Shown: piece after piece, positions 43,198-59,500 of the stretch
Layout: each line of letters starts with the position of its first letter
Position numbering within the stretch: the stretch's first letter is position 1
IMG/VR virus record: IMGVR_UViG_3300028558_000791
Location: 186,001 to 250,000 of that record
Reading direction: 5' to 3' (one strand)
Length of the DNA: 64,000 bases
The notes under the pieces: model-generated
What the model saw: only the letters and a program-made list of their open reading frames with translations
The model's database searches: none
Told to the model about the DNA's origin: nothing
Program-made: the position numbers and the translations under genes

Positions 43198-43971
43198 ATG
43201 AAACTCCGCGAACTGCTTCAAGAAATGAAGAGAGTACAAGAAAAGATAGGCTCATCACCAGCCTATATTTGCGGAGGTACGCCCAGAGATAAGTACATGG
43301 GACAATTACAGAACATTGCTGACATAGATGTTACAACCGGTGATAAGACGGTTGATTACCTATCTCAAGAATTTTTCATTGAGTTTCGTAAGAAATACAA
43401 CGTTACTCGTAAGACAATGGAAGATGGCCACAGCACTATCTTTATCGGCAGTCTAAAAGTAGACTTCTCATCCAACTTTATGGTTCCTAACGTGGATCAA
43501 GAGTTAGCTAAGATAGGAATTAAAAATCCTTCTAACATACAGAGAGAAATGTTTAGTCGTGACTTTACGTGTAACTCTTTATTACTGACAACGGACCTTA
43601 AGCAGATTCTCGATCCAACTAAAAGAGGATTCAAAGATATCAAGGAAAAGAAAATCAGGACTTGTTTAGCTCCAGAGATTACTCTAACTTCTAATAGGAA
43701 TAGAGTTGTAAGGGCTATTTATCTAGCTTGCAAATTAGATTTCGACATAGATGATTCAATTATTGCGTATGTAAAGAAGTATCCACAAACTGTTAAGATT
43801 TCAACTGAAAAAGCCATGAATGATAAGTTGAATGAAGCTTTCTCTAGGAATCCAGAGAAGGCGGCGGAGTTAATTTCCAAGATGAATTTGTGGACTCAGA
43901 TTCCAATTACGGAAAAAGTTTATCCGTACTACATGAAACATATCAAAGGAAAAGCTAATGTCAGTAAATAA
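43198..43971 (+). CDS. CCA-adding enzyme/poly(A) polymerase family nucleotidyltransferase (class II), short form
   Basis: AYICGGTPRD, DIDVTT, RDFTCNS, DPTKRG..DI, RVVRAI..ACKLDF. Confidence 0.88.
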   Translation: MKLRELLQEMKRVQEKIGSSPAYICGGTPRDKYMGQLQNIADIDVTTGDKTVDYLSQEFFIEFRKKYNVTRKTMEDGHSTIFIGSLKVDFSSNFMVPNVDQELAKIGIKNPSNIQREMFSRDFTCNSLLLTTDLKQILDPTKRGFKDIKEKKIRTCLAPEITLTSNRNRVVRAIYLACKLDFDIDDSIIAYVKKYPQTVKISTEKAMNDKLNEAFSRNPEKAAELISKMNLWTQIPITEKVYPYYMKHIKGKANVSK

Positions 43972-45025
43972 GAAGGGATATTTTCAAGGTGGTGGCGGAG
44001 TCAACGAACCAACGCCCGGCGAAAAGAAATACAAGTCGGATCCGGCTTTGGTTGTTCAGCCGCGCTTTGAAGAACCATTTTATCGCAACTACGATTTGTA
44101 TACAATTCCTGGTATGGAGCACATCGGCCCAGGCACCGGGTACCATGGCCTACAAAATTACGATAGCGTCCAGGAATTTCTAGAAGCAAGACGCAAGAGG
44201 ATGAAGGACCGCTACGTAGCGGATGATTCCTGGCAATTAGATTCTGGCAAACGAACTAAAGAAAATCCGGGCATCAAAGCTCGTGCCGCTATTTTTGAAA
44301 GAATTATCAAGACTGCTGGACCTAATTACGATTTAGGTAAAGGGCTCTACCAAGAGATGAGTGATGGTAAGGTTGATAGTGTAGAGGAATTTAGAGAAGA
44401 AGGCAACCATGGTCCCGGCGCTCTAATGATGGCAGATGATAATGCTGACTATATGTTACCACCTAAAGAACATGGTACCAGTATCTATAATTGGAAGAAC
44501 AGTCCTTATCAAGGAACTCCTGGTGCCAAAAACAAGAAAAAGAAGAAGGATGTCAATCATATTGATTTCCCAATTGATGATGAGATTAACCATGATGGCG
44601 AGATTTATCCAAGTGAAGAATCTTACCACAAGCCAGGATTAGTCGGACCTAGTGGTATAGATAACGTTGCCACCTTCCCAGGTGAAACGGGAGCAACTGA
44701 CTTCTCATCCTACATGAATTCAACTGATATTGCTGGTGAACACTCTTATCTACCAGAGCACGACTTAATGGATAGGGGTGACGATGCCCTCAATTTTGGT
44801 CAGGATTTGGAAGATGAACAGGGCCCAGCCAGAGGGCTTCAAGATGATGACCTTCAAAAACTTTTTAATAAGTACCTAACTCCCGATGAGACCGGTTTAT
44901 TTGGACTACCAGACGGTGTAGACCCAGAGGGCCACGATGCTGACCAGACTCAACAGGTAGAAGAGCCTTTCACCGGAACTTCCGACATAGGTACTCAAAT
45001 GTATGAGGATAAGTGGAATATCTAA
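43958..45025 (+). CDS. Acidic low-complexity hypothetical protein beginning with the scaffold-repeat motif
   Basis: N-terminal KKGYFQGGGGVNEPTPGEKKY matches the repeats in 56566..60294. Confidence 0.8.
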   Translation: MSVNKKGYFQGGGGVNEPTPGEKKYKSDPALVVQPRFEEPFYRNYDLYTIPGMEHIGPGTGYHGLQNYDSVQEFLEARRKRMKDRYVADDSWQLDSGKRTKENPGIKARAAIFERIIKTAGPNYDLGKGLYQEMSDGKVDSVEEFREEGNHGPGALMMADDNADYMLPPKEHGTSIYNWKNSPYQGTPGAKNKKKKKDVNHIDFPIDDEINHDGEIYPSEESYHKPGLVGPSGIDNVATFPGETGATDFSSYMNSTDIAGEHSYLPEHDLMDRGDDALNFGQDLEDEQGPARGLQDDDLQKLFNKYLTPDETGLFGLPDGVDPEGHDADQTQQVEEPFTGTSDIGTQMYEDKWNI

Positions 45026-45093
45026 AACCAACGATTATCATTGCATACAACCGCATATTATCATATAAAGAAAGCACTCCCAGAGGTACCTAA

Positions 45094-46176
45094 ATGACTT
45101 TACGATCAACAGCACAACAGCTATACGTCATAGACCCGTCGTCACCGGCGTCCCAGCTACCAGCACACGATGAGCACTCGGTTTCGCACATGCCTGAACA
45201 CATGCAGCATGATTTTTCCGAAGAGCTTATGGCTGGTGCCCCAATCGAAGTTTCCGAACCTGGTGAGATTGAAATCGTAGTTGAAGAACTTCCTGGCGCT
45301 CCTCCTGGCACTAAACACCCAGAACCAGAACTCGAAGTACATGATGAATCTTTGCAAGTCGAAGACGGCGAAGATAAGAAGGAAGATCCAAAAGAGACTA
45401 AGAACGCCAAATGGGATTGGTCTAAGCACGGTCCTCATGGCTTCGTAGCTTGGGTTAAGGAAAGACTTGATGGTGTTCCTAAGCACTCTGGCTATGACTC
45501 TGCCGGCCTTGAACGTGCCATGGCTTACATGGAAAAACTAGATAGCGAAATTTCTAAGGCCATGAGAATGGATCTAGATTCTGAATTGGATGCCAATCAA
45601 GTTGAAAAGATTCGCTCTCAACTAGATGATGGTTTATCTCGTTTGCGTGATCGTCTTGACAAGGTCAAAGATTCTAAGAAGTCTTCTAAGAAGCGTAAGA
45701 AGACTGCTGCTGAAATGCAACCACAAATTCAAGAAGTACTGAACAGATGGTCTGATGAAGATATCCAATCTTATGTTGTTGATGCTTCCATTCCAGGCGA
45801 AGAGTGGGATATCCAAAAGGCTATTCACCAAATTGCTAATGGTGGTGAAGAGCCAGGTTTTGAAGGCGCTTGGATTAAGACCGCACAAAAAATCTATGGT
45901 GTTGGTAATGGTGTAATGATTACTGTTCCACTTTTGATTTCTAGAATTGCAAGAGTTTGTGTTAATGGTACTGTTTCTGCAGGACATGATATCGAAGATT
46001 TGTACAATAGACAAGTTAAGAAGTGGGCTTTGAGCGAACGTGAACAAGCTGAAGTTCAACAACTATTGTTTGATATGGGATACCCACTACGTCAAGACCG
46101 CGGCTTTATGCCAGAGGATGACTTAGAAGTATTTGACACTGACAATATGGATTGGGCAGCCAACTACAGAGCATAA
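45094..46176 (+). CDS. Hypothetical protein, probably head-associated
   Basis: 360 aa; SD GAGG; STAQ, KTAA, KTAQ, DDLEVFD. Confidence 0.8.
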   Translation: MTLRSTAQQLYVIDPSSPASQLPAHDEHSVSHMPEHMQHDFSEELMAGAPIEVSEPGEIEIVVEELPGAPPGTKHPEPELEVHDESLQVEDGEDKKEDPKETKNAKWDWSKHGPHGFVAWVKERLDGVPKHSGYDSAGLERAMAYMEKLDSEISKAMRMDLDSELDANQVEKIRSQLDDGLSRLRDRLDKVKDSKKSSKKRKKTAAEMQPQIQEVLNRWSDEDIQSYVVDASIPGEEWDIQKAIHQIANGGEEPGFEGAWIKTAQKIYGVGNGVMITVPLLISRIARVCVNGTVSAGHDIEDLYNRQVKKWALSEREQAEVQQLLFDMGYPLRQDRGFMPEDDLEVFDTDNMDWAANYRA

Positions 46177-46177
46177 T

Positions 46178-46822
46178 ATGAGCAGACATCCAAGACATCA
46201 ATCTGTTGTCAGTAGACAATCTGACGCACCCGATAGTGACGACCACTGGTTAAGAGCGTTTGAGAACTCTCTTCAAAAGACCAGCGTACAGCCACGTGGT
46301 AATAGTTTATTCGAGCAGATTAACACCATCATGAATGGTAAATCAAAGTATCCATCGGTACAAGCTGCCGTTGATGATATGATGCAGCGTAGTGGTTTGA
46401 CTGACTATCTACAGACTAAAACTTCTTCTGCCGATGAAGATGAGCCTGTTAGTAAGCCAAAGAGATCAAAGAAGACTGCGCAAGCACAGGACCCTAAGAC
46501 TCCACAAGTAATTATCGAGAAGCCAAGCATTGCGCGTACTCTTGATAATATCATTGAGAACTCTAAAGGTAATTTATCCGTTCCAACTGTCATTAGTCGT
46601 TTACGCGCATTGCATGGTAGCGATGTTTCTGACAATGGTGCTTGGGAAGATGAGAGGCTCATTCGTTTAGTTAGCAATCTCAACCTAACTGCCAAGAAAA
46701 ACAACCCAGATAGCTACGATAGGTTTGATAACCTTGGCACTGGTGACCATTCTAGTAGTGAACGTGACATTGATCCATCAAATACTGATGCGTTCAACGC
46801 TTTAATGCCTGCTAAAATTTAA
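46178..46822 (+). CDS. Hypothetical protein; start refined to ATG 46178
   Basis: ATG 1 nt after the upstream stop; KTAQ. Confidence 0.75.
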   Translation: MSRHPRHQSVVSRQSDAPDSDDHWLRAFENSLQKTSVQPRGNSLFEQINTIMNGKSKYPSVQAAVDDMMQRSGLTDYLQTKTSSADEDEPVSKPKRSKKTAQAQDPKTPQVIIEKPSIARTLDNIIENSKGNLSVPTVISRLRALHGSDVSDNGAWEDERLIRLVSNLNLTAKKNNPDSYDRFDNLGTGDHSSSERDIDPSNTDAFNALMPAKI

Positions 46823-46836
46823 GTGCTTTGCACTTA
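46820..46836. terminator. Short palindrome joining two convergent stop codons; possible bidirectional terminator
   Basis: taagtgc-ttt-gcactta: 7-bp stem whose arms contain both stop codons. Confidence 0.35.
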
Positions 46837-47385
46837 CCCAGCCTGTTTTTCAGGTTCTGGCGGGTATTTTTCAGTCCATAGCTTGCTATACTTACAGTTA
46901 TAGCACAACACCTCTTTGTCTTTGCTAAGAGTTAGCGTTTCTACTCTATCACTTTTGCATTCTTTGCAGCATCCACCATAGCATTCAACAATTTTTCTTC
47001 TGTATGCCTCAGCATATTTGCTTTTGAACGGCTTATTCTTATTACAGTTGTAGCAAATCACTTTGTGACCACTCTTCTGAACAATATTGTCATACAGATA
47101 GTTAATGTCACCATTGATTGTTAACTTAGTATATTCATCTTCACCACAGTTACAGCAAGCATTACCATAAGCAAGAATGACGGCGCTTCGTTTCATACGA
47201 TAGCGCCCGTTTTGTTTTTTAGAGTAATCCACATCAGACTGATGAGACTTCTTGTCAGCCTTTTTGCGACATGGCTTGCAGATATAATAGCCTTTATTTT
47301 GGTCGTAAGTATGCCAATTTTTGAGGGTTAATGAAATGCCACATTTGAGGCATGCCTTTTTTCTTCGTTTTTTCGTGGAAGGCAT
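46834..47385 (-). CDS. Cys-rich protein with two degenerate HNH-like repeats
   Basis: AYGNACCNCGE..KLTI...VICYNCN and CYGGCCKEC...TLTL...VLCYNCK; N-terminal CLKC, CKPC. Confidence 0.65.
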   Translation of the reverse strand: MPSTKKRRKKACLKCGISLTLKNWHTYDQNKGYYICKPCRKKADKKSHQSDVDYSKKQNGRYRMKRSAVILAYGNACCNCGEDEYTKLTINGDINYLYDNIVQKSGHKVICYNCNKNKPFKSKYAEAYRRKIVECYGGCCKECKSDRVETLTLSKDKEVLCYNCKYSKLWTEKYPPEPEKQAG

Positions 47386-47411
47386 CTTACTGAATATACG
47401 ATCATTTTAGT

Positions 47412-49295
47412 ATGCCAAGTCTACATATTGAAAATAAAGAAATGTTCGAGAAGATGAAGAAGCAACTTGCAATGCTTGACCCTGTAACTTTTTGCGAGTC
47501 CAATTTAACATTGGAAGGAGAGCCATTCAAACTAAGTGGTAATGGATATAAGCCGTTCTCAGATATCTATAGATACATCGGAATCAAAGCATTAGAGCCA
47601 GATGCAAAACCAGTTATCTTAGTTAAGGGACGTCAGGTAGGAGCCACTACGATGGCCAGCGCCCTAGAAATGTACTTCATGGGTTCTGGATTATTTGGTG
47701 ATGGATTCCGTCCACCAATCCGTATCATTCATGCATTCCCTCAATTGGAATTAGCTGCCGCTTATTCAAAGACCAAGCTTCAGCAAATGATTAGTCAGGC
47801 TAAGATTCCCGAAGGAACTCCAGAAAACAAGGCTTCCCGCCCAAAGTCTTTCATGCAGCAATTGCTTGATCAGTCATCTCCAACTAATGACTCTTTGCAC
47901 TTCAAACAGTTTATTGGCGGAAACCATTTGTGGGTTGAGTCAACTGGTATTGATGCCGACAGAATCATGGGTCGTACCGCTGACATTCTATTCTTTGACG
48001 AAGTCCAGAAGACTACCAGCCAAGCCATCGGAAACGCGCTCAAGATTCTAACCAACGCTAAGTATGGTAGACCAACTAAGGGCGTACAAGTTTTCTTTGG
48101 AACGCCTCGTCGTAAGGGATCTGATTACCACAAGATGTGGCAGTCATCTTCTCAACAGTATTACTATTTAGGATGTGAGAGCTGTAAAGAACATTTCCCA
48201 CTATATACTCCAGGATCTGATGATTGGGAGAAAGTTTGGATTCACGGTAAAGTTGTTAAGTGCTCTAAGTGCGGACATGAACAAGATAAGCTACAAGCAC
48301 AGGAACGTGGTAAATGGGTAGCCTTTAAGAATCCAAATGACCCAGACTGTGATATGATTGGCTTTCATATTAATCAGCTTTACATGCCTAAATTCACACG
48401 AGAAGATATCGATAAGGAAAAGCCGGGCCGTCATCCAATCAATACGGAACGTGTTTTTCAAAACGAAGTTCTTGGAGAGTTTTACCAGGGCGATGCAAGT
48501 CCATTGTCTCCAGATGAAGTTCGCACCATGTGCGCTGACTTCGAGAGAAAGTTTAGCCCACGTATTCTTCCATCAAAAGGTATTAACCAATATTTTACTG
48601 TACTTGGAATCGATTATGGCGCTCGTTCCGACTTGGAGCAATTGGCCGATCCAGAAAGAGTTAAGCCGGCAGGACAGTCATACAGCACGGCTGTTGTTCT
48701 ACAAACTAAGGGCGCTCAATTGTTATCAATCGAGTTTGCTACCAAGTTCAAGCGTAATGACGTTGAAAGTAAAAAAGGAATCATTGATCAACTGATGAGA
48801 CAATATAGTATTCAGTTGGCGGTCGGAGACATTGGTTACTCCAATGACTTCTCTTCTATGTTGCATAACACGTATGGAGATAGGTATTTAGTTTCTCGTG
48901 CCCATAATAAGATTAATGACCATGTCAAATTCAATCATGAAGCATTTCCAAAAGAAATCATTTTTGAAAGAGACTTCTACATTACTGAACTTTATGATCA
49001 GATGAAGAAGGGGATGATTAGATTTCCATTTGGAGATTATGAAAAGATAGCCTGGTTGATTGAACACAGTTGCAGTATGGAACTAAAGCCATCTATTTCT
49101 AAATATGGAGATCATACAGTTCATTATGTGAAAGGTGGAACTCCAAACGACGGGTTTATGGCATTGTTGAATGCCTATTTAGCCTTTAAGTTCTTGGTAA
49201 GTAGAGGATTTACAAATAATAATCCGGCTAATCATACAGCCAAAAACCTAACCAAACCCATGGTAATGTCTGGTTATGTGCCCAGGAAGTTCTAA
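47412..49295 (+). CDS. terL: Terminase large subunit
   Basis: VILVKGRQVGATT, LFFDEVQ, FGTP, zinc module CESC...CSKC, GFHINQL, NEVLGE, nuclease LGIDYG, DIGY, DGFMA. Confidence 0.92.
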   Translation: MPSLHIENKEMFEKMKKQLAMLDPVTFCESNLTLEGEPFKLSGNGYKPFSDIYRYIGIKALEPDAKPVILVKGRQVGATTMASALEMYFMGSGLFGDGFRPPIRIIHAFPQLELAAAYSKTKLQQMISQAKIPEGTPENKASRPKSFMQQLLDQSSPTNDSLHFKQFIGGNHLWVESTGIDADRIMGRTADILFFDEVQKTTSQAIGNALKILTNAKYGRPTKGVQVFFGTPRRKGSDYHKMWQSSSQQYYYLGCESCKEHFPLYTPGSDDWEKVWIHGKVVKCSKCGHEQDKLQAQERGKWVAFKNPNDPDCDMIGFHINQLYMPKFTREDIDKEKPGRHPINTERVFQNEVLGEFYQGDASPLSPDEVRTMCADFERKFSPRILPSKGINQYFTVLGIDYGARSDLEQLADPERVKPAGQSYSTAVVLQTKGAQLLSIEFATKFKRNDVESKKGIIDQLMRQYSIQLAVGDIGYSNDFSSMLHNTYGDRYLVSRAHNKINDHVKFNHEAFPKEIIFERDFYITELYDQMKKGMIRFPFGDYEKIAWLIEHSCSMELKPSISKYGDHTVHYVKGGTPNDGFMALLNAYLAFKFLVSRGFTNNNPANHTAKNLTKPMVMSGYVPRKF

Positions 49296-49319
49296 AGTAG
49301 TCTAAATACCGAGGTTTAC

Positions 49320-49327
49320 TGATATAT
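49320..49327 (+). promoter_or_regulatory. TGATATAT promoter-like box upstream of the portal gene
   Basis: Intergenic; lies between tctaaat (49301-07) and atttaga (49331-37). Confidence 0.55.
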
Positions 49328-49375
49328 CACATTTAGAGTATTAGGTAGAGGGTATAGTGGAACAACAGAGGTTAC

Positions 49376-51253
49376 ATGGCTGGTATTAAAAAATCAGGTT
49401 TAGGGGAGGCTCCTTCCTTTTCAGCGAGATTCTTGGAAGGTAGATCCACTACCCCACAGGTCAGCGCCATTATGGCTCATGGCGTTTCAGGAGAGAGAAG
49501 AGTTATTCTTTCTGATGAAGTAGACCAAGGCTATTTTCGCGATGGCTCAGGCCCTAATTACAATAAGATGGCGTTAGCTAACGCCCCTACAAATGCTTCT
49601 AACGTAGTTTCATCTACTGGCGTAAAGAAATATGGACAGGCAGTTAGCAGTTCTGGTGGTATGTTTCGCGGTATTCATGGCGATACTGTCAAGCAAACCC
49701 CTGAAGTTTATTCGCCATTGTGGCTGAACAGCAACTTAAATCTTCCCCGCGACCGTGCAACTATTAATGCATGGTGTCGTAGCTTTTTCGCATTGAATCC
49801 ATTCGTGCACAATGCAATCAGTTTGCATAGCACTTATCCAATTAGCAAGCTTTCTATCAAATGTCCTAACAAGGATATTGAAAAGTTCTTCGATGATATG
49901 ATTGAAGAAATTGACCTAATGAATATCTGTATTCAAATCGCCCAAGAGTATTGGCTCTTAGGAGAAGCGTTTGTTTATGCAGAACTGGATGAAGGTAAAG
50001 GTAAGTGGAGTCGCCTACACATTCAAAATCCAGACTTCATGATTGTCAAACGTACGGTCGTAGCCAGCGAACCAATCATCATGCTTCGTCCTGATGAGAA
50101 TCTCAAGAAGATCATTTTCTCTAATCGTCCAACCGATATTGAACAGCGTAAGCAGCTTAACCAGCACATTATCGATTCTGTCAGACGCGGAGAAAACATT
50201 CCACTAGACAACTTCCACGTATCACATTTGGCCCGTAGAATTAGTCCTTACGAAATTAGAGGTACTGGACTTCCAGTCTGTATTTTCCGTCAGTTGATGC
50301 TTTTCGACAAGCTTCGTGAATCCAAGTACGCCCAGTCCGATAATATGATTAACCCATTGACTTTGGTCAAGATTGGTTCGGCCGATTACAAGCCAACCTT
50401 CGCTGACCTTGAAGCATGGAGAGGCGTATTCGAAGAAGCCCAGTACGACAAGGACTTTAAGATTTTCACTCATGAAGGTGTTGCCGTTGAAAGAGTTGGT
50501 TGGGGACAGGGTATCTATGATATCTCTGGAGACATCACTCAACTTATTAAGGAAATCTTCGTTGGTATGTTCGTTCCACCAGTAATGATGGATGGTGGTG
50601 ATACAACTACTTATGCTAACGGATCTGTAGCTCTTGACGTTCTTCGTCAGAGATACATGCAGTTTCGCAATATGATGTCCCAATGGTTGAAGACCAAGAT
50701 TTTCGCCCCAATCTCTAAGATTCAAGGGTTCTACGACTACTCTGGTGGTGAAAAGCAACTCATTGTTCCAGAAATTGATTGGAACCATATGTCTTTGTTT
50801 GATGCAGACACTTACATCAATAGCTTGGTAACTCTATCTCAGGGACAGGCTGACCAGAAGAGAGTCTCCGTTCATACTTTGTATCGTTCATTGGGTCTTG
50901 AGTATGAAGACGAAGTACGCAAGATGCGTAAAGAAAATGTTCAGAATGCAATCTCCAAGAAGGAAATGGCAGCTCTAGAATCTATGGACCTCAATGCACT
51001 ACGTGCCCTGGATGACCAGGATGAAATTCCAGAGCCAAAACAACCGGGTGCAGGTCAAGAGCAACCACTACCAGGCGAAACTCCAGGTGGAGCCCCTCCA
51101 GGCGGTGGAATGCCGGATCTTGGTGGCCTACCAGGCGGACCTCCTCCACCACCTCCACCAGCAGGTGGCCCTCCACCCCCTCCGAGTGGCGCTTCAGCGG
51201 GTCTTCCTCCACCAGGTGGCGGAGCCCCTCCAGGTCCACCTCCAGCCGGATAA
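49376..51253 (+). CDS. Portal protein with Pro/Gly-rich C-terminal tail
   Basis: Directly after TerL; NPFVHNAISLH, EYWLLGEAFVY, LHIQNPD, SPYEIRGTG, IFVGMFVP, LRQRY; about 75-aa PG tail. Confidence 0.85.
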   Translation: MAGIKKSGLGEAPSFSARFLEGRSTTPQVSAIMAHGVSGERRVILSDEVDQGYFRDGSGPNYNKMALANAPTNASNVVSSTGVKKYGQAVSSSGGMFRGIHGDTVKQTPEVYSPLWLNSNLNLPRDRATINAWCRSFFALNPFVHNAISLHSTYPISKLSIKCPNKDIEKFFDDMIEEIDLMNICIQIAQEYWLLGEAFVYAELDEGKGKWSRLHIQNPDFMIVKRTVVASEPIIMLRPDENLKKIIFSNRPTDIEQRKQLNQHIIDSVRRGENIPLDNFHVSHLARRISPYEIRGTGLPVCIFRQLMLFDKLRESKYAQSDNMINPLTLVKIGSADYKPTFADLEAWRGVFEEAQYDKDFKIFTHEGVAVERVGWGQGIYDISGDITQLIKEIFVGMFVPPVMMDGGDTTTYANGSVALDVLRQRYMQFRNMMSQWLKTKIFAPISKIQGFYDYSGGEKQLIVPEIDWNHMSLFDADTYINSLVTLSQGQADQKRVSVHTLYRSLGLEYEDEVRKMRKENVQNAISKKEMAALESMDLNALRALDDQDEIPEPKQPGAGQEQPLPGETPGGAPPGGGMPDLGGLPGGPPPPPPPAGGPPPPPSGASAGLPPPGGGAPPGPPPAG

Positions 51254-51272
51254 TGTTTTAAATCCGCCGAAT

Positions 51273-51330
51273 AACCCCTACTTGTGAATAATCACGCATT
51301 GTTTTAGCTATTGCGCACAAGTAGAGGGTT
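51273..51330 (+). promoter_or_regulatory. 14-bp hairpin (one bulge) covering the SD of gene 51334
   Basis: aacccctacttgtg (51273-86) / cacaagtag-a-gggtt (51316-30); 29-nt loop. Confidence 0.75.
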
Positions 51331-51333
51331 TCC

Positions 51334-52569: not shown

Positions 52570-52570
52570 T

Positions 52571-53719
52571 ATGCCAGTCAGGGGTAAAGCCAACCTTGGA
52601 CCAAATTTCTATCCGAAATTGGTCCAGATATCCGAAGAATTGGGGATGAAACCAGAAGACCTTCTGGCTGTCATGACCTCAGAGTCTGGCTTGAATCCAT
52701 CAGCATATGAAGAAACATACAAAGGATCTGGTTTAATTGGATTTATGCCAGATACTTTGAGGGGCCTTGGCTATAAAGGCACTTGGCAAGACTTTACCAA
52801 ACTAACTGGCGAAGAGCAACTTGATTGGGTCAAGAAATTCATTCAAGGTAAAAATGGATTGATGGGTAATCGTAAGTTTACATCTGCCGGATTGTACTAT
52901 ACTGGTAACTTATGGCCTATTGCTCTAAAACTTCCTGGTGTAATTAAAGGCGATCCTAGTACTCGTATTCTAGAATCAGATCCAGAAACGGATGCAAGCG
53001 GTAAGTATAGTAAGAAGTATTTTGATCTTGGATACAAGATTAGCAAAAGTTTTGAAAGCAAAGCATATAAAGCAAATCCTCTTTTTGATCGTGATAAAAA
53101 AGGATACATCACTTATGGTGATATGATTAAGCAGACTGAGATTAACAGAAAGAATCCTGTTTATCAAAAGGCAATTGCGGAAATGGCTAAGAGCACCGGC
53201 TATCAACCTGGAAAATCAATCAACCCATCTATGCTCGCACAAAAAAATAATACACAGTCACCTTCATCGCTACAAGGAATGGATGGCATCATGGATAAAT
53301 ATATACAGGAGTTGCAGGTGGCTGCCACGTCTTATGACTTAAAGAAGTTATACAAGCGTGCCTTACCAACTCATGACGTCCTGATTCAAATTTCTGCACC
53401 AGACTATTCTAGCGCAATAGAATTCTCTCGCGTATTGACTGCGGCTTTAGACGAAGATTTACTATCATCATCTTATCCATATACAGATGGTCATCAAGTG
53501 GAAATTGAATGTTCCATCTCAGGACCAGAGAAAGAATGTTTCGCCGCAGTTCAACAGATGACCAATGCTGTAGCTGAGGCTTTCAAAGATGCAACTGCAA
53601 AAATTGGTGGTATTGCTATTAAAACCCAGCAATTTACCAATAAGAAGTCATCTTATCAACCAATCAGCCCTAGAACTGCTGATACTAACTACAGGAAGTT
53701 CCTGCTCAAATTCATCTAA
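52571..53719 (+). CDS. Lytic transglycosylase/lysozyme-like protein with additional C-terminal domain
   Basis: EELGMKPEDLLAVMTSESGLNPSA...GSGLIGFMPDT matches SLT motifs I and II. Confidence 0.8.
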   Translation: MPVRGKANLGPNFYPKLVQISEELGMKPEDLLAVMTSESGLNPSAYEETYKGSGLIGFMPDTLRGLGYKGTWQDFTKLTGEEQLDWVKKFIQGKNGLMGNRKFTSAGLYYTGNLWPIALKLPGVIKGDPSTRILESDPETDASGKYSKKYFDLGYKISKSFESKAYKANPLFDRDKKGYITYGDMIKQTEINRKNPVYQKAIAEMAKSTGYQPGKSINPSMLAQKNNTQSPSSLQGMDGIMDKYIQELQVAATSYDLKKLYKRALPTHDVLIQISAPDYSSAIEFSRVLTAALDEDLLSSSYPYTDGHQVEIECSISGPEKECFAAVQQMTNAVAEAFKDATAKIGGIAIKTQQFTNKKSSYQPISPRTADTNYRKFLLKFI

Positions 53720-53730
53720 GGAATAGCAAA

Positions 53731-54135
53731 ATGGTATCGGAAAAACAACTTTTGGACACAATTCAGCAGCTTCAAGGTTCAGGCAAAACATTTGCTGAGT
53801 TCCTGGCAGAGATTTTTAAAGATAAATTCATCGAAGTTTATGTTGGAGATTCTTATGAAGATGTAAGTACAGAACAAATCTCAACAACATATCCTGCTGT
53901 ATTTTGTGGTAAAGTTGTTGCTGCATATCGTGAATGTTTAATTCTTAGTTGCGCTTATGTTAATGGTAAGCACTTAACAATGGGCAATATGATGTTCGTT
54001 AATGAAAGAGCTATTAGAGCTTTGAATGAAGTGGATGGTAAAGGTACACTAGAAGATATGATGCTTCGTAGTAAAGAGACTTTGGATATTAAAGCGACCT
54101 TTGGGTCTGTAGAAAAGCCTGATACAAAGAAATGA
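53731..54135 (+). CDS. Hypothetical protein
   Basis: 134 aa, SD AAGGA. Confidence 0.75.
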   Translation: MVSEKQLLDTIQQLQGSGKTFAEFLAEIFKDKFIEVYVGDSYEDVSTEQISTTYPAVFCGKVVAAYRECLILSCAYVNGKHLTMGNMMFVNERAIRALNEVDGKGTLEDMMLRSKETLDIKATFGSVEKPDTKK

Positions 54136-54884
54136 TCAACACCGACACGCTGCTACAACTTGCTAGTACTTATGAAGATAAGTGTTTACAGGATTTGGTA
54201 AAGGTCGCGAAAATTCGCGAATTACCAGACGGTAGCTATCGTGTGCTCTCTGAAAAGGGAAAAGAACTAGGTTCCTATAAATCTAGGAAAGGCGCAGAAA
54301 AACGTCTTCGTCAAATAGAGTTCTTCAAACACTTGGACAAATCAAAGGCTGATGATCAAGGCAATCCAATGAAGCCAATTGACTTATCTAAAGCGGATGA
54401 GTTTAGTTATTCTGCTTTGATGAGGGCGTTACGTCAACAAGCCACTCCTGAACAAGTAATTACATTTCTTAAGATTTTCAAACTACAATTCGATAGAGCG
54501 GTTAAGGGTAAAATCAATAAGCCAGAACGAGTCGCTTTACAGAATGCGGTTATCAAATTCCATAAGATTCACCCAATCAAATTAGATAAGAAGATGGTTA
54601 AGTTTGCTGCTGTTGCAGAACTTGGAAATGCTGATCAAGTTGGAACATATTTATCCGGTATTGTTAGGTTCATTCTTAATAGATTGCCACAGGATAAAAG
54701 ACCAAGGGCTACTGAGATTCTCAAGCAGAAATTTAACGTTATGAGTGAGAATGAGATTTCTGGTAAGAACATGCCAAACGCCGCTGTTTACGGTCAAGCC
54801 ATTACATTCGTTAAACACGTACTGTTCAATCAGGACGCCAGCTATGTAAGGGAAGTTCTTAACAGCCTATCGAGGAATCTATGA
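54132..54884 (+). CDS. Hypothetical protein with basic IRELPDGSYRV...LGSYKSRKGAEKRLRQIEFFK module
   Basis: 250 aa, ATGA coupling. Confidence 0.75.
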   Translation: MINTDTLLQLASTYEDKCLQDLVKVAKIRELPDGSYRVLSEKGKELGSYKSRKGAEKRLRQIEFFKHLDKSKADDQGNPMKPIDLSKADEFSYSALMRALRQQATPEQVITFLKIFKLQFDRAVKGKINKPERVALQNAVIKFHKIHPIKLDKKMVKFAAVAELGNADQVGTYLSGIVRFILNRLPQDKRPRATEILKQKFNVMSENEISGKNMPNAAVYGQAITFVKHVLFNQDASYVREVLNSLSRNL

Positions 54885-55651
54885 TTAGAAGATTCCGAGC
54901 TGTAATTCCAGGGGTTCTGTATCGTGGCTCCGGCCCCACTCCACAAGACGTTCTCGAATTACAAGATAAATTAGGGATCAAAAAGATTGTCTCTTTAGAC
55001 CAAGAGATTGGTGAGAAAATTGATCGCGCTTGTCAAATGTTAGGTATCAATCATATCAAATTGTATATTGATCATACTAGAAAGAGTTTGTATGATTTTT
55101 TATCTCAGGATATGAAAAAACTCTTTCTAGAGGGTGGGCCAACATTTGTTCATTGCCATGAGGGTAAGGATAGAACTGGATTGGCCTGCGCTATAGTAGA
55201 ATGTAAATTCCTTGGTAAAGATCCCGAGAAAGCTATTCAAGAGGCAAAGGCTTTAGGGTTTGGTGTTGGCATAGCTCCTCAAACTACTCAGCAGTTTGAG
55301 CGTATCATTCGTCACTGCAAGCCCGATAAGGATACTAATAGTGCTGATATAGTCTCTAATGAACGAGAGTATATTGGTGATAATCGTGATAGTTTCTTGG
55401 ATGAGGGACATCAAGGATCGTTCTCTCCATACCTATCTCAGACTAAGCAAGACCCAGTGGATTCATTATACCCATCTACACTAGACCAATACCCAACTCG
55501 TCAAAATTATGATAGTCCACCATTATTCCGGCATGATCCTAGTGAGAGTGTCACATTACCTAATGTAGGGGAATATGACAACGATGCTGGTCAACGAGGT
55601 TTTGGGCCAGTGGAACGCATGGATGGTTTCTTCTCAGAGGTAGGTCATTGA
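54881..55651 (+). CDS. Cys-dependent tyrosine/dual-specificity phosphatase with acidic tail
   Basis: LYRGSGP, IKKIVSL, P-loop FVHCHEGKDRTG (CX5R). Confidence 0.9.
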   Translation: MIRRFRAVIPGVLYRGSGPTPQDVLELQDKLGIKKIVSLDQEIGEKIDRACQMLGINHIKLYIDHTRKSLYDFLSQDMKKLFLEGGPTFVHCHEGKDRTGLACAIVECKFLGKDPEKAIQEAKALGFGVGIAPQTTQQFERIIRHCKPDKDTNSADIVSNEREYIGDNRDSFLDEGHQGSFSPYLSQTKQDPVDSLYPSTLDQYPTRQNYDSPPLFRHDPSESVTLPNVGEYDNDAGQRGFGPVERMDGFFSEVGH

Positions 55652-56302
55652 ATGATTAAAAAGTCTTATTCCGTACAAATGAGCTATGATGTGTCTGACA
55701 GCGAAAAGCAGCAGGCAGAGAAAGCGCTATTGTATTTTAAGGCTGCTGAAAGATTCTTAATGCAATCTTCTGATCATTTGAATATTATGAAGACTCCATT
55801 TAAGGATAATCCAGATATGACGCCTGAAGATGTTATGAAGGCTCGTGCCGTCATTAGACGTTTCAGAGATAAAGCTATTGATAATTTTGACCAATTCAAA
55901 AAAGTAGCTTTTGATTGCGTTAATCTTATGCAGACTTTTGAAAGCGACACTCAAACTCTCAAACTAATGAAATCATTCATTGCTGCTATTGATGATTTGG
56001 AAGTTAGTGTTAATCAATTCTCAGAATTATTTAATGATTTGCACTCAAAAGACTTCGTCAAAAACGTAGTAACTTTCATTGAGAGTATCCAAAAGCAATG
56101 CGATGAGATTGATGAAATTATTGACGAAAGAATCAAGTCCCATATTCAAACCAATATATTGGCTAGTAGTTGGGTTGACTCAGTTAGCAATGATTTACAA
56201 ATGAAAATAGAGAAAAAGACACCATTAATCGTCGATCTCTATAATCAAAGACAAGAGCAGCTAAATGATGCTGTAGAGGAAAGGATGCCATCAGGGAAAT
56301 GA
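55652..56302 (+). CDS. Hypothetical coiled-coil protein
   Basis: 216 aa; DDLEV motif. Confidence 0.75.
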   Translation: MIKKSYSVQMSYDVSDSEKQQAEKALLYFKAAERFLMQSSDHLNIMKTPFKDNPDMTPEDVMKARAVIRRFRDKAIDNFDQFKKVAFDCVNLMQTFESDTQTLKLMKSFIAAIDDLEVSVNQFSELFNDLHSKDFVKNVVTFIESIQKQCDEIDEIIDERIKSHIQTNILASSWVDSVSNDLQMKIEKKTPLIVDLYNQRQEQLNDAVEERMPSGK

Positions 56303-56404
56303 AAATGGTAATATCGCTGTATATTAGATGAAGTTTTCGGTCGTAGATCGGAAAATTGTAGCAATATTACATTATACCTGTGTGGTCTCCCAATTGGAGA
56401 GTTT

Positions 56405-56560
56405 ATGTTCATTAAACACGGTGATGGAAAAATACTAGACGTTGTTGACGGAGAAGAGCTAACTGACGCTCAGAAGAAAGCTGTCAAAGATCGTTCTAAA
56501 GACCTCGTCAAACAATCTGACGATTCAACTGATTCTTCCAAGAAGAAGTCAGGGAGCTAA
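56405..56560 (+). CDS. Unlisted 51-aa protein
   Basis: SD GGAGA; MFIKHGDGKILDVVDGEELTDAQKKAVKDRSKDLVKQSDDSTDSSKKKSGS; ends 5 nt before the protease gene. Confidence 0.7.
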   Translation: MFIKHGDGKILDVVDGEELTDAQKKAVKDRSKDLVKQSDDSTDSSKKKSGS

Positions 56561-56565
56561 AACGA

Positions 56566-59500
56566 ATGCCCATTATTAAACTAGGCGAAGCCCACGAAAT
56601 TAAACTGGAGAACATGGAGTCATGTCTTCCTGAAGTGAGTGCTGAGGTCTTAGATAACTTTAGGAAGTTTGCAACCAATCTAAAGAAGATTGCTCCTAAA
56701 GCTGAAGACTTCCTCTATTTCTCTGCTGTTATGATGCATGCTGCTGAAGCATCTGCGCTTAACGAAGATGGTACACCAAAGCTAACCCTCAAAGGCGAAC
56801 CAGTCCAAGTAGGATGGGATACTAGTGGTGGTACATGGAAATGGGCATCTAATGACCCTAACATTAAGCCATATAAGAATTCTAATGGAGACATATTTCC
56901 AGAAGCAGAATTAACCAAAGCTTACAAGAAGTGGAAGCACAAGCCTCTATGCGTGGATCATAAATCGAGTTCGGTTGACCATGTTAGAGGTTTTATCGTT
57001 GATACTTATTACGACCGCTCACTCAAGAGAGTGATTGCATTGTGCGCCTTAGATAAGGCCGGATTCCCTCAATTAGCTAGACAAATTTCAACAGGCGTTT
57101 CTAACTGTGTATCCATGGGTACAGCAGTAGGAAGAGCCATCTGTTATGACTGCGGTAGAGTCGCTCGTGCTGAGCAAGACTTCTGCGCTCATATGAAGAA
57201 CAAGACTTGCTACGGTGAAATCAACGTAGACCTCAATCCAATTGAGTTATCTATCGTTGTAAATGGTGCAGACCCTAGAGCCAACATCAAACACATCATC
57301 GCCGCAGCAAACACAATGAACACTTACCTAGAGAATCGCGCTAAGGAACTAGAAAAAATAGCCGACCTCAAGTTTAGTGCTCAATTCAGTGTGTCAGATC
57401 TTAATGGTGACGAAGGTGGAGGAAGTGCTCAATTTAATGTTGATGCTACTGACATTAACCAGTTCAAGAGCGAATTAGACGAAGCATTCCGCAAAGTCCA
57501 AGAGTTCAAGAATGTAAAAATTTCTGAAAAAGATACTAATTCTACAGCATCTAATCAGACGTCGGGTTCGATCGCCATGGATGAAGGTGCACCCACGGAT
57601 TCTGGATTGGCTCTCCAAACTCCGCAAGCCATTAGGCTTGCATCCGCTGATGTAGAGGCGGAATCATTGGCTGAGCTTCAGCAAGTAACTGCATCAATTG
57701 AAGCTACGTTAGGTCAAATGAAGAAGAGCTTGGATAAGTTAGCAAAAACTTCTACTACTAAAAAACAAGAGGAAAACATGTCTGGATCAAAAGAAATCAA
57801 TAAGCAAGCTTATTTCCAGGGTGGCGGTGGCGTTAATGAACCAACTCCAGGCCAAGTTAAATATCCAAAGGACGGTCTTAACGAGCAACTTCGTGAACAC
57901 GAAGATAAGCACATGACCGGTCAACCACCTTTCCCTGAGGTTGGTCCAGTGGATGGAATGCATCCTTCTCCAGCTTCGGCTGATCCTTCTGACGAGCTTG
58001 CTCGTAAGAAGATGCTCGCTAGAGCAGAAGCAGAAGAGCGTGCCCTCAAGCGTAACGCCATTGTCAATATGGCCAAGGACGCATTGAAGAGCAAGGAAGC
58101 TTACTACCTCGGTGGTGGCGGTGTAAACGAGCCAACTCCAGGTAAAGTAAAGTATCCAAAAGACAAGCTCAACGAAGAGCTACGTGACTACGAAGATAAG
58201 CACATGGTTGGACAGCCTCCATTCCCAGGTGTTGGTCCAGTCGACGGCATGCACCCTTCTCCATCATCTGCTGATCCAAAGGATGAATTGAAGCGTAAGC
58301 AAATGCTCGCTCGTGCACAACTACGTGCCAGATTTGTCAAGGCCGCTAACAGTAACGGCACTCAGAACAGAGCCAGAAGCGCTTGGGAAGTATTCCTTGG
58401 TGACAAGCTATTGTTGACCGCATCTGTTGACGAACTCTCCGGTGGAAACACTGACGTTCTATATGACTCAATTGCTACTAAGGACTTCGGAGCCAAGTTG
58501 ATCGAAAAGGTCAAAGTTCAAGGCGCTGATGCAGTAAGCAAGCTAATTAAGAAAGCCCAAGGCGCTCCAGGCGCACCACCAGCCGGCCCTCCAGCAGGTG
58601 ATCCATCCAGTGCTCCACCTCCAGGCGGTGACATGGGTGCAGGCGCTCCAGATGCTGGTCCTCCAGCAGAAGACGCAGGCAAGTCTGGTGACCCAAAGCA
58701 AAGCGCAGTAGAACTCGCTGAGAAGGTAAGAGACCTAAGCTCTGACCTAGTAGAAGCAGTTCGTGCCCTAACCGGTGAACAAGCCGAAATGGGTGGCGCA
58801 GGCCCAGCACCAGATGCAGGTGGAGTTGGTGGCCCAGCCGGTGGTCCAATGGCCGCTGATGACCAGGATGCAAAGAAGAAGAAAGACTCTATGGAGTCCT
58901 CTGCTAACTTTAGCACCTCAACTCTCAACACCTTGAGAAAAGAATTGAATGGCGCACTTACTCATGCAATGAAGGAAGCTATTGCAGAGCTAACCGAACA
59001 CCAGCAAGAATTAGACATGATTGCCGGTATGTACGACAAGGGTGCTGTAACTCAATCTAACCAAGACTTTGTTGGAACTATCGTAGAAGACGCATTGAGC
59101 GAAGCTAAGACTGCTGTTGCAGACGGCTTTAAGCTAATGACCGCCTTCGTCAAGTATGCTCGTGGTACCAAGGCAATTGTCAAGCGTGCTGAGATTGAAT
59201 CAGAACTTGAATCACTAGCCGATGGAGACACTATGAGCGACAAGAAGGACAGTCACTCCGCAGACGGCGGTGACTTGATGGGACTAATTAATGACACCAA
59301 TGCAGACTTGGACGCAGTTCAAGAGATGATGGGTGACGACCAGGATCACGATCTTGGCGGTGAACTTGATGGCGATGGCCTAGCTGGACTCTTTGAAGAG
59401 GGTGGCGAAGGTGAAGAACATGGTCACGAGGAACCACTATTCGAAGGTTTGGCTGACGACAACGATCTCACTTTTGAACAAGGTGAGAAAGTACCACCAG

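What the first reader, a model, noticed from the sequence alone, without database searches (positions are those of the whole stretch)
43970..58317. YFQGGGGVNEPTPG module used three times in two different proteins
K-x-(A/G)-Y-(F/Y)-(Q/L)-GGGGVNEPTPG-x-x-KY occurs at the N-terminus of the 43958 protein (43970-44041) and at the start of both 75-aa scaffold repeats (57802, 58093). The DNA differs at many synonymous sites, so selection acts on the peptide. In the scaffold it directly follows a K-x-A motif, so cleavage would expose Y-F-Q-G4 as a new N-terminus. It is a likely assembly or docking signal that recruits the 43958 protein into the prohead.
Basis: partly seen in the sequence, partly recalled or inferred. 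Interest (0 to 1): 0.7.

Follow-up and report, generated by a model that had tools for sequence, protein, structure and literature searches.

The report
Shared docking motif in megaphage scaffold
A 21-residue disordered peptide occurs three times in a 481-kb uncultivated megaphage: at the start of an apparently internally translated scaffold protein, once more inside it, and at the start of one other disordered protein. It is kept almost unchanged in hundreds of related phages and is most likely a docking tag for head assembly, but its binding partner is unknown.

Summary
K-x-[AGS]-Y-[FYW]-[QL]-GGGG-V-N-E-P-T-P-G-x-x-K-Y occurs three times in the window and nowhere else in the 480,838-bp genome. 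One copy is at residues 5-25 of a 355-aa protein (43958-45025). Two are at residues 413-433 and 510-530 of a 1242-aa prohead protease-scaffold fusion (56566-60294). Between any two copies, 9-10 of the 21 codons differ synonymously. Every full-length homologue inspected keeps the motif or a close variant. All 106 exact copies in IMG/VR lie in these same two gene families.

New here: a conserved Shine-Dalgarno sequence and ATG (57767-57780, Met405) lie eight codons upstream of scaffold copy 1. Distant relatives carry a separate scaffold gene that begins at that point. The scaffold is therefore probably also made as a nested 838-aa protein, like lambda C/Nu3 or herpesvirus UL26/UL26.5. Its N-terminus then resembles that of the 43958 protein.

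Both proteins are predicted to be disordered at the motif. I read it as a short linear docking motif that places both proteins in the prohead core. The one co-fold job, with capsid protein and protease, gave no verdict. Function remains inferred.

The parts
43958..45025 (+). Gene for the 355-aa motif-bearing protein (P0003). The N-terminal 120 residues and the last ~60 residues are conserved. The middle is acidic and variable.
   Evidence: ORF. 340 homologues, none with a Pfam, PHROG or NCBIfam family. AlphaFold2 mean pLDDT 51.6, mostly disordered. Conservation profile.
43970..44032 (+). Motif copy A: K5-Y25, KKGYFQGGGGVNEPTPGEKKY.
   Evidence: Column identity is 0.90 here against 0.57-0.76 elsewhere in the family. 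K5, Y8, P18, P20, K24 and Y25 are invariant in 60 sequences.
43198..43971 (+). 257-aa nucleotidyltransferase of the CCA-adding / poly(A) polymerase head-domain type. Its 3' end overlaps the P0003 start by 14 nt. It is fused in frame to P0003 in some relatives.
   Evidence: PF01743 5.9e-13. phrog_2244. NCBIfam CCA and PcnB models hit, but far below their cut-offs. Fusions: P0085, P0090, P0091, P0104, P0107, P0112, P0123 and the stop-free ORF in L027.
56566..60294 (+). 1242-aa prohead protease-scaffold fusion gene (P0004).
   Evidence: ORF. phrog_18299 head maturation protease 1.8e-12 at residues 105-213. tblastn to Bacillus phage G gp19 and to actinophage genes, some annotated as prohead or capsid maturation protease. 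693 homologues.
56566..57375 (+). Protease domain (about residues 1-270), with invariant H132 and S183 and an inserted C193-x2-C196 ... C207-x-H209 cluster.
   Evidence: Alignment of 56 orthologues.
57767..57780 (+). Internal Shine-Dalgarno sequence AAGAGGA (57767-57773), a 4-nt spacer, and ATG (57778-57780, Met405). This is the proposed start of a nested scaffold-only protein.
   Evidence: All 29 distinct orthologous DNA sequences carry A[AG]AGGA 4-7 nt before an in-frame ATG; 28 of 29 carry GAGGA. This holds although the encoded residues differ (QEEN, KEDT, KEET, QEEQY). The first Glu codon is GAG in all 28 sequences that have Glu there, whereas the gene uses GAG for only 28 of 101 Glu codons. 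Met405 is at least 90% conserved in 56 proteins down to 27% identity (M26). Of the three in-frame ATGs flagged with an SD-like sequence, it is the only one that is conserved and carries GAGGA.
57778..60294 (+). Proposed nested scaffold ORF (838 aa, Met405-Phe1242), beginning MSGSKEINKQAYFQGGGG.
   Evidence: Relatives L098 and L099 have a separate scaffold gene starting MASVKEMNKKAYFNGTEEP / MSTKNAYFQGTEEP, with its own SD and with the upstream ORF's stop immediately before it.
57802..57864 (+). Motif copy B1: K413-Y433, KQAYFQGGGGVNEPTPGQVKY.
   Evidence: pLDDT <50 in the AlphaFold2 model, i.e. disordered.
58093..58155 (+). Motif copy B2: K510-Y530, KEAYYLGGGGVNEPTPGKVKY.
   Evidence: pLDDT <50. 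It is degenerate in some lineages (YFQNGLEKGNVNTPTPGQVKY).
57799..58341 (+). Two tandem 97-aa scaffold repeats (residues 412-495 and 509-592). Each consists of the motif, a short helix, the loop GQPPFPxVGPVDGMHPSP and a basic helix.
   Evidence: BLASTP gives 75% identity over 84 aa, E 6e-49. hhalign on the parts after the motif gives E 1.3e-41. Secondary structure.

Best explanation
The motif is a disordered, bipartite short linear docking peptide. It has an aromatic anchor, [AGS]-Y-[FYW]-[QL]-G, then a glycine-rich spacer of variable length, then E-P-T-P-G-x-x-K-Y. It belongs to the internal core of the prohead.

The large gene is expressed in two forms. [quoted passage not shown] A more abundant nested scaffold starts at the conserved internal SD+ATG (Met405, 57778) and carries the motif at residues 9-29 and again at 106-126.

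The 355-aa protein from 43958 carries the same peptide at residues 5-25. Its first ~90 residues are probably a diverged third copy of the scaffold repeat. By presenting the same peptide, it binds the same receptor as the scaffold and is built into the scaffold core as a minor, largely disordered and acidic internal protein. That receptor could be the inner face of the capsid shell, the portal, or a folded scaffold domain.

Shown: the motif, its copy number, its conservation, its restriction to two gene families, the internal SD+ATG, the split genes in relatives, and the predicted disorder. Inferred: translation from Met405, binding, the identity of the receptor, and presence of the 43958 protein in proheads.
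For: There are three copies only in 481 kb, with chance expectation 0. The copies differ at 9-10 synonymous codons, so they are old and kept by purifying selection on the peptide, not by recent gene conversion. Each copy has its own conserved flank across genomes (..KKY-KSDPA..PGQxKY-PKD..PGKxKY-PKD).

The motif is the best conserved stretch of both families. It persists in P0003 homologues at 36-40% identity and in scaffold representatives down to about 34%. All 106 exact copies in 96 IMG/VR loci lie in these two families.

Both AlphaFold2 models leave the motif unstructured (pLDDT <50) beside confident helices and a confident alpha/beta domain. That is typical of a linear motif which folds on a partner. 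In one genome the short variant YFQGTEEPTPG (P0003 homologue) coexists with the long variants YFQGAGGVNEPTPG and YWQGGGGVNEPTPN (scaffold). The two anchors therefore matter and the Gly spacer does not.

Gene context is a head module: terminase, portal, protease-scaffold and an HK97-fold capsid protein on the same strand, with conserved synteny in relatives.

Weak collinear similarity continues for about 80 residues after the motif: BLASTP 1e-12 with the motif included, hhalign E 0.02-0.08 without it, and the family member P0384 against repeat 2 at E 0.009.
Against: There is no direct evidence of binding. The one co-fold job (capsid protein + protease domain + P0003 residues 1-50) scored 0.00 and gave no verdict. 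The monomer model of the scaffold did not dock the motif onto any scaffold domain.

No proteomic or structural data exist for any member; all are metagenomic. Only one non-scaffold protein carries the motif, unlike the T4 capsid-targeting sequence, which several internal proteins share. It may therefore be a feature of scaffold paralogues rather than a general cargo tag.

Homology beyond the motif is only marginally significant. The fusion to a nucleotidyltransferase in some relatives could point to a role outside the capsid.
Confidence: 0.5

Rival explanations
1. The motif is mainly the recognition and cleavage site of the prohead protease. It would be a processing junction at which the protease frees the scaffold from the fusion, trims the 43958 protein, and in fused relatives releases the nucleotidyltransferase. 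Candidate scissile bonds are [AGS]|Y or Q|G, just before the flexible Gly run. This rival is compatible with docking and could be a second step.
For: The motif sits at domain or gene boundaries in four settings: linker|scaffold, Met|P0003, nucleotidyltransferase|P0003, and Met|stand-alone scaffold. It is disordered and Gly-rich, so it is accessible. A protease domain with invariant His132 and Ser183 is encoded in cis. T4 capsid-targeting sequences are both docking signals and cleaved leaders (PMC3012670 and PMC9026906 were found but not read; the statement rests on my own knowledge).
Against: Twenty-one conserved residues are far more than known prohead proteases need; from my own knowledge, T4 uses L/I-x-E and phiKZ uses S/A/G-x-E. 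The conserved half downstream of the Gly run (EPTPGxxKY) is not explained. Cleavage in P0003 would remove only 7-10 residues. The internal start already yields a scaffold separate from the protease. No similar site is visible in the capsid protein N-terminus. The co-fold with the protease domain gave no verdict.
Confidence: 0.2
2. The motif is a scaffold-specific portal-recruiting element, like the YYPGE motif of the herpes simplex scaffold that contacts portal tryptophans. The 43958 protein would then be a portal-vertex accessory present in about 12 copies or fewer, not a bulk core component.
For: The motif is rich in Tyr, Pro and Gly, like HSV-1 scaffold residues 143-151 (YYPGE), which are implicated in portal binding (10.1101/2020.09.30.320457). 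The 43958 gene lies two genes upstream of terminase and portal, in conserved synteny. Scaffold C-termini, not N-termini, usually bind the capsid protein (own knowledge), which leaves the N-terminal motif free for another partner.
Against: This was not tested: the portal did not fit into the single co-fold job. Two motifs on each of hundreds of scaffold chains is a large excess over 12 portal subunits. The resemblance to YYPGE is in composition only.
Confidence: 0.15
3. The motif has no role inside the capsid. It would bind a host or phage factor, such as a chaperone, an unfoldase adaptor or an RNA-related partner of the adjacent nucleotidyltransferase. The two families would share it only because the 43958 protein arose by duplication of a scaffold repeat.
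For: The 43958 protein is fused to a CCA-adding / poly(A)-polymerase-like enzyme in about eight relatives and overlaps its gene here. It has no recognisable structural-protein family. Similarity after the motif is weak but collinear, which suggests common descent.
Against: Conservation peaks exactly on the motif in both families, across hundreds of phages. This argues for one shared and still active function rather than a relic. The scaffold copies lie in a protein whose only known job is inside the prohead. Gene order places the 43958 gene within the head module.
Confidence: 0.1

Closest known systems
Capsid targeting sequence (CTS) of phage T4 internal proteins IPI-III
   Same: It is a short peptide near the N-terminus that is thought to direct a non-scaffold protein into the scaffold core of the prohead. 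The proteins carried are small and poorly structured. A prohead protease is present in the same core.
   Different: The T4 CTS is about 10 residues, is shared by several internal proteins, is not present as such in the main scaffold gp22, and is removed by gp21 at L/I-x-E (own knowledge; reviews listed). Here the peptide is 21 residues and unrelated in sequence. It is present twice in the scaffold itself and in only one other protein. It also works at internal positions, and cleavage is unproven.
Nested protease-scaffold genes: herpesvirus UL26/UL26.5 and phage lambda C/Nu3
   Same: The protease is fused N-terminally to the scaffold, and a shorter in-frame scaffold-only product is made from the same ORF. 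This lets a little protease co-assemble with much scaffold (PMC11565193; lambda from own knowledge). Here a conserved internal SD+ATG sits at Met405, and the gene is split at the same point in relatives.
   Different: In herpesviruses the short form comes from a separate transcript; here it would come from internal translation initiation. Expression of the short form is inferred, not shown. The protein is much larger (1242 aa) and has a tandem 97-aa repeat.
Portal-binding YYPGE motif of the HSV-1 scaffold
   Same: It is a short Tyr/Pro/Gly-rich linear motif in a scaffold protein that mediates contact with another prohead component (10.1101/2020.09.30.320457).
   Different: There is no sequence relationship. 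The partner here is unknown. The HSV motif is not shared with a second protein.
Encapsulin cargo-loading peptides
   Same: A disordered Gly-rich peptide, separated from its cargo by a flexible linker, docks onto the luminal face of an HK97-fold shell (own knowledge). The capsid protein here has the HK97 fold (NF042927).
   Different: Encapsulin peptides are usually C-terminal and have a different consensus. Binding to the shell was not supported or refuted here (no verdict).

Membership tests
Prohead (capsid maturation) protease fused to scaffold | N-terminal domain homologous to phage head maturation proteases, with conserved catalytic His and Ser | tested here: met
   phrog_18299 1.8e-12 at residues 105-213. 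tblastn to phage G gp19 gives 34% over residues 34-247, and there are hits to actinophage genes annotated as prohead or capsid maturation protease. H132 and S183 are invariant in 56 orthologues. No Pfam or PDB sequence hit, so fold and catalytic class are not assigned.
Prohead (capsid maturation) protease fused to scaffold | C-terminal part is scaffold-like (long helices or coiled coils, disorder, low complexity) and lies in a head gene module | tested here: met
   The AlphaFold2 model of residues 380-1242 shows long helices, disordered Pro/Gly/Ala and acidic tracts, and one small alpha/beta domain. Terminase, portal and HK97-fold capsid protein lie on the same strand nearby. No structural match in the PDB.
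Nested scaffold gene (lambda C/Nu3, herpesvirus UL26/UL26.5 type) | In-frame internal start site with its own translation or transcription signal, conserved among relatives | tested here: met
   A[AG]AGGA plus ATG in 29 of 29 distinct orthologous DNAs, despite differing residues. Met405 is at least 90% conserved. Of the in-frame ATGs in the gene, only this one is both conserved and preceded by GAGGA.
Nested scaffold gene (lambda C/Nu3, herpesvirus UL26/UL26.5 type) | The short product is actually made, in excess over the fusion | not testable with these tools
   This needs ribosome profiling, a western blot or N-terminal sequencing. Indirect support: relatives L098 and L099 encode the scaffold as a separate gene starting at the equivalent point.
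Capsid targeting sequence (T4 CTS-like) | The peptide is necessary and sufficient to load a protein into the prohead | not testable with these tools
   No cultured member exists. The co-fold with capsid protein and protease domain gave no verdict.
Capsid targeting sequence (T4 CTS-like) | N-terminal leader removed by the prohead protease at its consensus site | not tested
   The cleavage specificity of this protease family is unknown. The motif also functions at internal positions (copy 2, and the nucleotidyltransferase fusions), so a leader-type mechanism is not required.
Capsid targeting sequence (T4 CTS-like) | Shared by several different internal or cargo proteins of one phage | tested here: not met
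   Only two genes in the 481-kb genome carry it, and only two gene families do so in IMG/VR.
Sequence homology to the T4 CTS, the HSV YYPGE motif or encapsulin cargo-loading peptides | Recognisable sequence similarity | tested here: not met
   No match for the module in GenBank phages at E up to 10, in PDB chains at E up to 10, or in Pfam, PHROGs or NCBIfam.

The most novel reading that the evidence does not exclude
The 21-residue peptide is a portable head-loading tag of a large clade of ~480-500-kb megaphages. Any protein placed behind it would be built into the scaffold core. In the lineages where the tag follows a CCA-adding / poly(A)-polymerase-like nucleotidyltransferase, that enzyme would be packaged and delivered into the host with the DNA, for example to repair tRNA 3' ends or to modify RNAs at the onset of infection. 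The tandem copies in the nested scaffold would make the core a multivalent motif-receptor network, and the 43958 protein would join it as a client.
Probability: 0.2. Interest if true: 0.75.

Novelty: new variant of a known kind. Interest (0 to 1): 0.5.

Why it matters
Almost nothing is known about how heads of ~0.5-Mb phages are built, because only one such phage (phage G) is cultured and it lacks this motif. A near-invariant 21-residue peptide shared by the scaffold and one other protein gives a concrete, mutable handle on that process. It can be tested in a heterologous co-expression system (capsid protein, portal, scaffold, tagged reporter) without culturing the phage. If it is a loading tag, it could be used to package foreign proteins in very large capsids.

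The conserved internal start adds a bacterial-virus example to the nested protease/scaffold strategy known from lambda and herpesviruses. It also corrects the gene model, since the ORF is listed as one 1242-aa protein.

Tried and rejected
1. Co-fold of capsid protein (A4) + protease domain (A5) + P0003 residues 1-50: score 0.00, no verdict. It counts neither for nor against binding. The portal could not be included, and only one job was allowed.
2. AlphaFold2 of scaffold residues 380-1242. I looked for intramolecular docking of the motif on a scaffold domain. The motif stayed disordered, so the self-binding idea gains no support.
3. Foldseek of that model against the PDB gave nothing with E<=0.001. 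A PDB sequence search with the module and with the protease profile gave nothing useful.
4. tblastn of P0003 and of the repeat module against GenBank phages found no match.
5. Phage G gp20 and gp21, which lie downstream of its protease, were checked for a comparable motif. None was found (best E 0.6). The phage G multi-omics paper says nothing on scaffold processing.
6. ESM Atlas look-alikes for P0003 returned only unnamed viral clusters below the noise level.
7. I tested for co-variation of motif variants between the two proteins in the same genome. There is none: a short and a long variant coexist in L104.
8. I tested for similarity between P0003 residues 120-355 and scaffold residues 600-1242. 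There is none, so the shared part is limited to the N-terminal module.
9. A sigma-70 promoter scan upstream of Met405 found nothing. It is uninformative for a phage with unknown promoters.
10. I considered an N-degron reading, in which cleavage exposes Tyr for ClpS. It is set aside because the scaffold is enclosed in the prohead and cleavage is unproven.

Full report
**Context.** The window is bases 186001-250000 of a single 480,838-bp contig with 43% G+C. Long same-strand ORFs read in table 11 throughout. The finding lies in a head-morphogenesis block:
- a large terminase (47412-49295; phrog_675 5e-61);
- a portal (49376-51253; phrog_16240 1e-49);
- an SLT-like lysozyme-domain protein;
- a 1242-aa ORF (56566-60294) whose residues 105-213 match head maturation proteases (phrog_18299 1.8e-12);
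- about 10 kb further on, outside the window, an HK97-fold major capsid protein (genome 256223-257236; phrog_2522 2.9e-81; NF042927 5e-62).

GenBank phages share only the protease domain, for example Bacillus phage G gp19 and large actinophages. This is therefore an uncultivated megaphage lineage. Metagenomes hold hundreds of relatives, many on contigs of 467-511 kb.

**The observation.**
- All three peptides are present as described.
- The degenerate DNA pattern for GGGGVNEPTPG hits three times in the window, against 0.00 expected.
- A regex scan and a motif HMM run over all six frames of the genome find only these three copies. Their E-values are 3e-19 to 5e-20, and the next hit has E>2.
- Pairs of copies share 6-7 identical codons and differ by 9-10 synonymous and 4-6 non-synonymous codons out of 21. 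The DNA has drifted while the peptide has not.
- The two scaffold copies open two tandem repeats with a period of 97 aa. They align over 84 residues at 75% identity (E 6e-49) and are 71% identical in DNA.

**Conservation and distribution.**
- The 43958 protein (P0003) has 340 homologues. Among the 120 listed, every full-length one carries the motif or a near variant (NQPTPG, GTEEPTPG, GDGGPNEPTPG). The few without it are N-terminal truncations.
- In a 60-sequence alignment K5, Y8, P18, P20, K24 and Y25 are invariant. Motif columns average 0.90 identity, against 0.57-0.76 elsewhere.
- The scaffold region has 693 homologues. Both copies are retained in the orthologues inspected, with variants (YFQGAGG.., YFQGTEEPTPG). 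In some lineages copy 2 is degenerate (YFQNGLEKGNVNTPTPGQVKY).
- Each copy keeps its own flank across genomes. The three are therefore old paralogues and have not been homogenised by conversion.
- In one contig (L104) the P0003 homologue has the short form YFQGTEEPTPG, while its scaffold has the long forms. The two ends of the motif are therefore the functional parts, and the Gly run is a spacer.
- A scan of IMG/VR for the exact peptide found 106 copies in 96 loci. All are in protease-scaffold ORFs (90) or P0003 homologues (16). No third family uses it.

**A nested scaffold gene.** Eight codons before copy 1 lies Met405. It is at least 90% conserved in 56 scaffold sequences down to 27% identity.
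- In all 29 distinct orthologous DNAs available, the ATG is preceded at 4-7 nt by A[AG]AGGA, and in 28 of 29 by GAGGA. This holds even though the encoded residues vary (QEEN, KEDT, KEET, QEEQY/H).
- The first Glu codon there is GAG in all 28 sequences that have Glu, although GAG makes up only 28 of 101 Glu codons in the gene.
- AAGAGGA is a Shine-Dalgarno form seen in front of other genes of the window. Met405 is the only in-frame ATG of the gene that is both conserved and preceded by GAGGA.
- In more distant relatives the scaffold is a separate gene beginning MSTKNAYFQGTEEP.. or MASVKEMNKKAYFNGTEEP... It has its own SD, and the stop codon of the upstream ORF lies immediately before it.

I therefore infer that the ORF yields two products: the 1242-aa fusion and an 838-aa scaffold from 57778. 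This is the arrangement known from herpesvirus UL26/UL26.5 (PMC11565193) and lambda C/Nu3 (own knowledge). The nested scaffold starts MSGSKEINKQAYFQGGGG and the 43958 protein starts MSVNKKGYFQGGGG, so the two N-termini are alike.

**Structure.**
- AlphaFold2 with family alignments predicts the 43958 protein to be largely disordered: mean pLDDT 51.6, with a few helices at residues 61-149.
- In the scaffold model (residues 380-1242) both motifs have pLDDT <50. Each is followed by a short helix, a Pro-rich loop and a long basic helix.
- A confident alpha/beta domain follows at about residues 574-666 (pLDDT 86-89). After it come coiled coils, Pro/Gly/Ala and acidic tracts, and a helical C-terminal domain.
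- The motif thus behaves as a short linear motif in a disordered context.

**Extent of the shared module.**
- With the motif included, P0003 residues 3-90 align with each repeat (E 1e-12 and 3e-9).
- Without the motif, profile-profile comparison is only marginal (E 0.02-0.08) but in register: GPxxGxH followed by a basic helix.
- One family member, P0384 (E 4e-17 to P0003), aligns collinearly with repeat 2 after the motif at E 0.009.
- Nothing further along the two proteins is similar.
- Common descent of the first ~90 residues of P0003 and the scaffold repeat is therefore likely but not proven.

**Interpretation.** The data fit a docking peptide used by the scaffold (twice) and by one further internal protein to bind the same site in the assembling prohead. 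The data do not identify that site. My single co-fold job (capsid protein + protease domain + P0003 residues 1-50) returned no verdict, and the portal was not tested.
The motif reaches an N-terminal position through the internal start.
- The motif is also conserved at clearly internal positions. These are copy 2, and about residue 257 in the roughly eight relatives where the upstream nucleotidyltransferase gene (43198-43971; PF01743) is fused in frame to the P0003 homologue.
- In the window those two genes overlap by 14 nt in different frames, and P0003 has its own SD.
- The motif's recurrent position at gene and domain junctions keeps the processing-site rival alive, possibly as a second step after docking.

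**Comparison with known systems.**
- In mechanism the nearest analogue is the T4 capsid-targeting sequence. This motif fails one of its defining features, use by several cargo proteins, and shows no sequence similarity to it.
- The gene architecture matches the nested protease/scaffold type.
- The Tyr/Pro/Gly composition recalls the HSV-1 scaffold YYPGE portal-binding motif, and the Gly-rich disordered peptide recalls encapsulin cargo-loading peptides. Both are resemblances, not membership.

**Verdict.** The feature is real and strongly selected. It is best described as a new variant of a known kind: a prohead docking or targeting peptide, in a nested protease-scaffold gene. The mechanism remains untested.

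Noticed in passing
window 43198-43971 and 43958-45025; relatives P0085, P0090, P0091, P0104, P0107, P0112, P0123; L027: The CCA-adding / poly(A)-polymerase-like nucleotidyltransferase gene overlaps the motif-protein gene by 14 nt here. In about eight relatives it is fused to it in frame, with the junction exactly at the motif (..K-V-A-Y-F-Q-GGGG). This may mean that the enzyme travels with the motif protein.
   Followed up: partly
window 57142-57192 (P0004 residues 193-209): The protease domain carries an invariant C193-x2-C196 ... C207-x-H209 cluster, which looks like a small zinc-binding insertion. I am not aware of this in characterised prohead proteases.
   Followed up: no
relatives P0202, P0222, P0232; several ~1500-aa representatives: Some orthologues of the protease-scaffold protein are about 350 residues longer and carry intein and homing-endonuclease Pfam domains (PF14890, PF14528, PF05203). 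These are inteins inserted in a head maturation protease-scaffold gene.
   Followed up: no
window 51080-51253 (portal C-terminus); 43100-43189 (C-terminus of the 640-aa protein); 58550-58800 (scaffold): The portal ends in a ~60-residue Pro/Gly tail (..GGPPPPPPPAGGPPPPPSG..PPGPPPAG). The 640-aa protein upstream of the nucleotidyltransferase also ends Pro-rich, and the scaffold has a Pro/Gly/Ala tract. These low-complexity Pro tracts in head proteins are unexplained.
   Followed up: no
window 54881-55651: A 256-aa dual-specificity / tyrosine phosphatase-like protein (PF13350, PF22784) lies inside the head gene block, two genes before the scaffold. It is syntenic in relatives. The motif has two invariant tyrosines, but no link was tested.
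   Followed up: no
window 44966-45025 (P0003 C-terminus): The extreme C-terminus GTSDIGTQMYEDKWNI is nearly invariant in the family (Y349, D351, W353, N354, I355) and unique in the genome. It may be a second docking motif, which would make the protein a two-ended adaptor.
   Followed up: partly
genome 256223-257236 (L001:10223-11236), outside the window: The major capsid protein has 47 conserved N-terminal residues ahead of the region matched by the HK97-fold capsid model NF042927 (match at residues 48-327). This may be a propeptide or an extended N-arm, and it would be a natural place to look for the protease's cleavage site.
   Followed up: no
window 56566 (start of the fusion ORF): The annotated start of the 1242-aa ORF has only a weak, distant SD-like sequence (GGGAG, 9 nt upstream), whereas the internal start has a strong one. 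This fits low expression of the fusion and high expression of the nested scaffold.
   Followed up: partly
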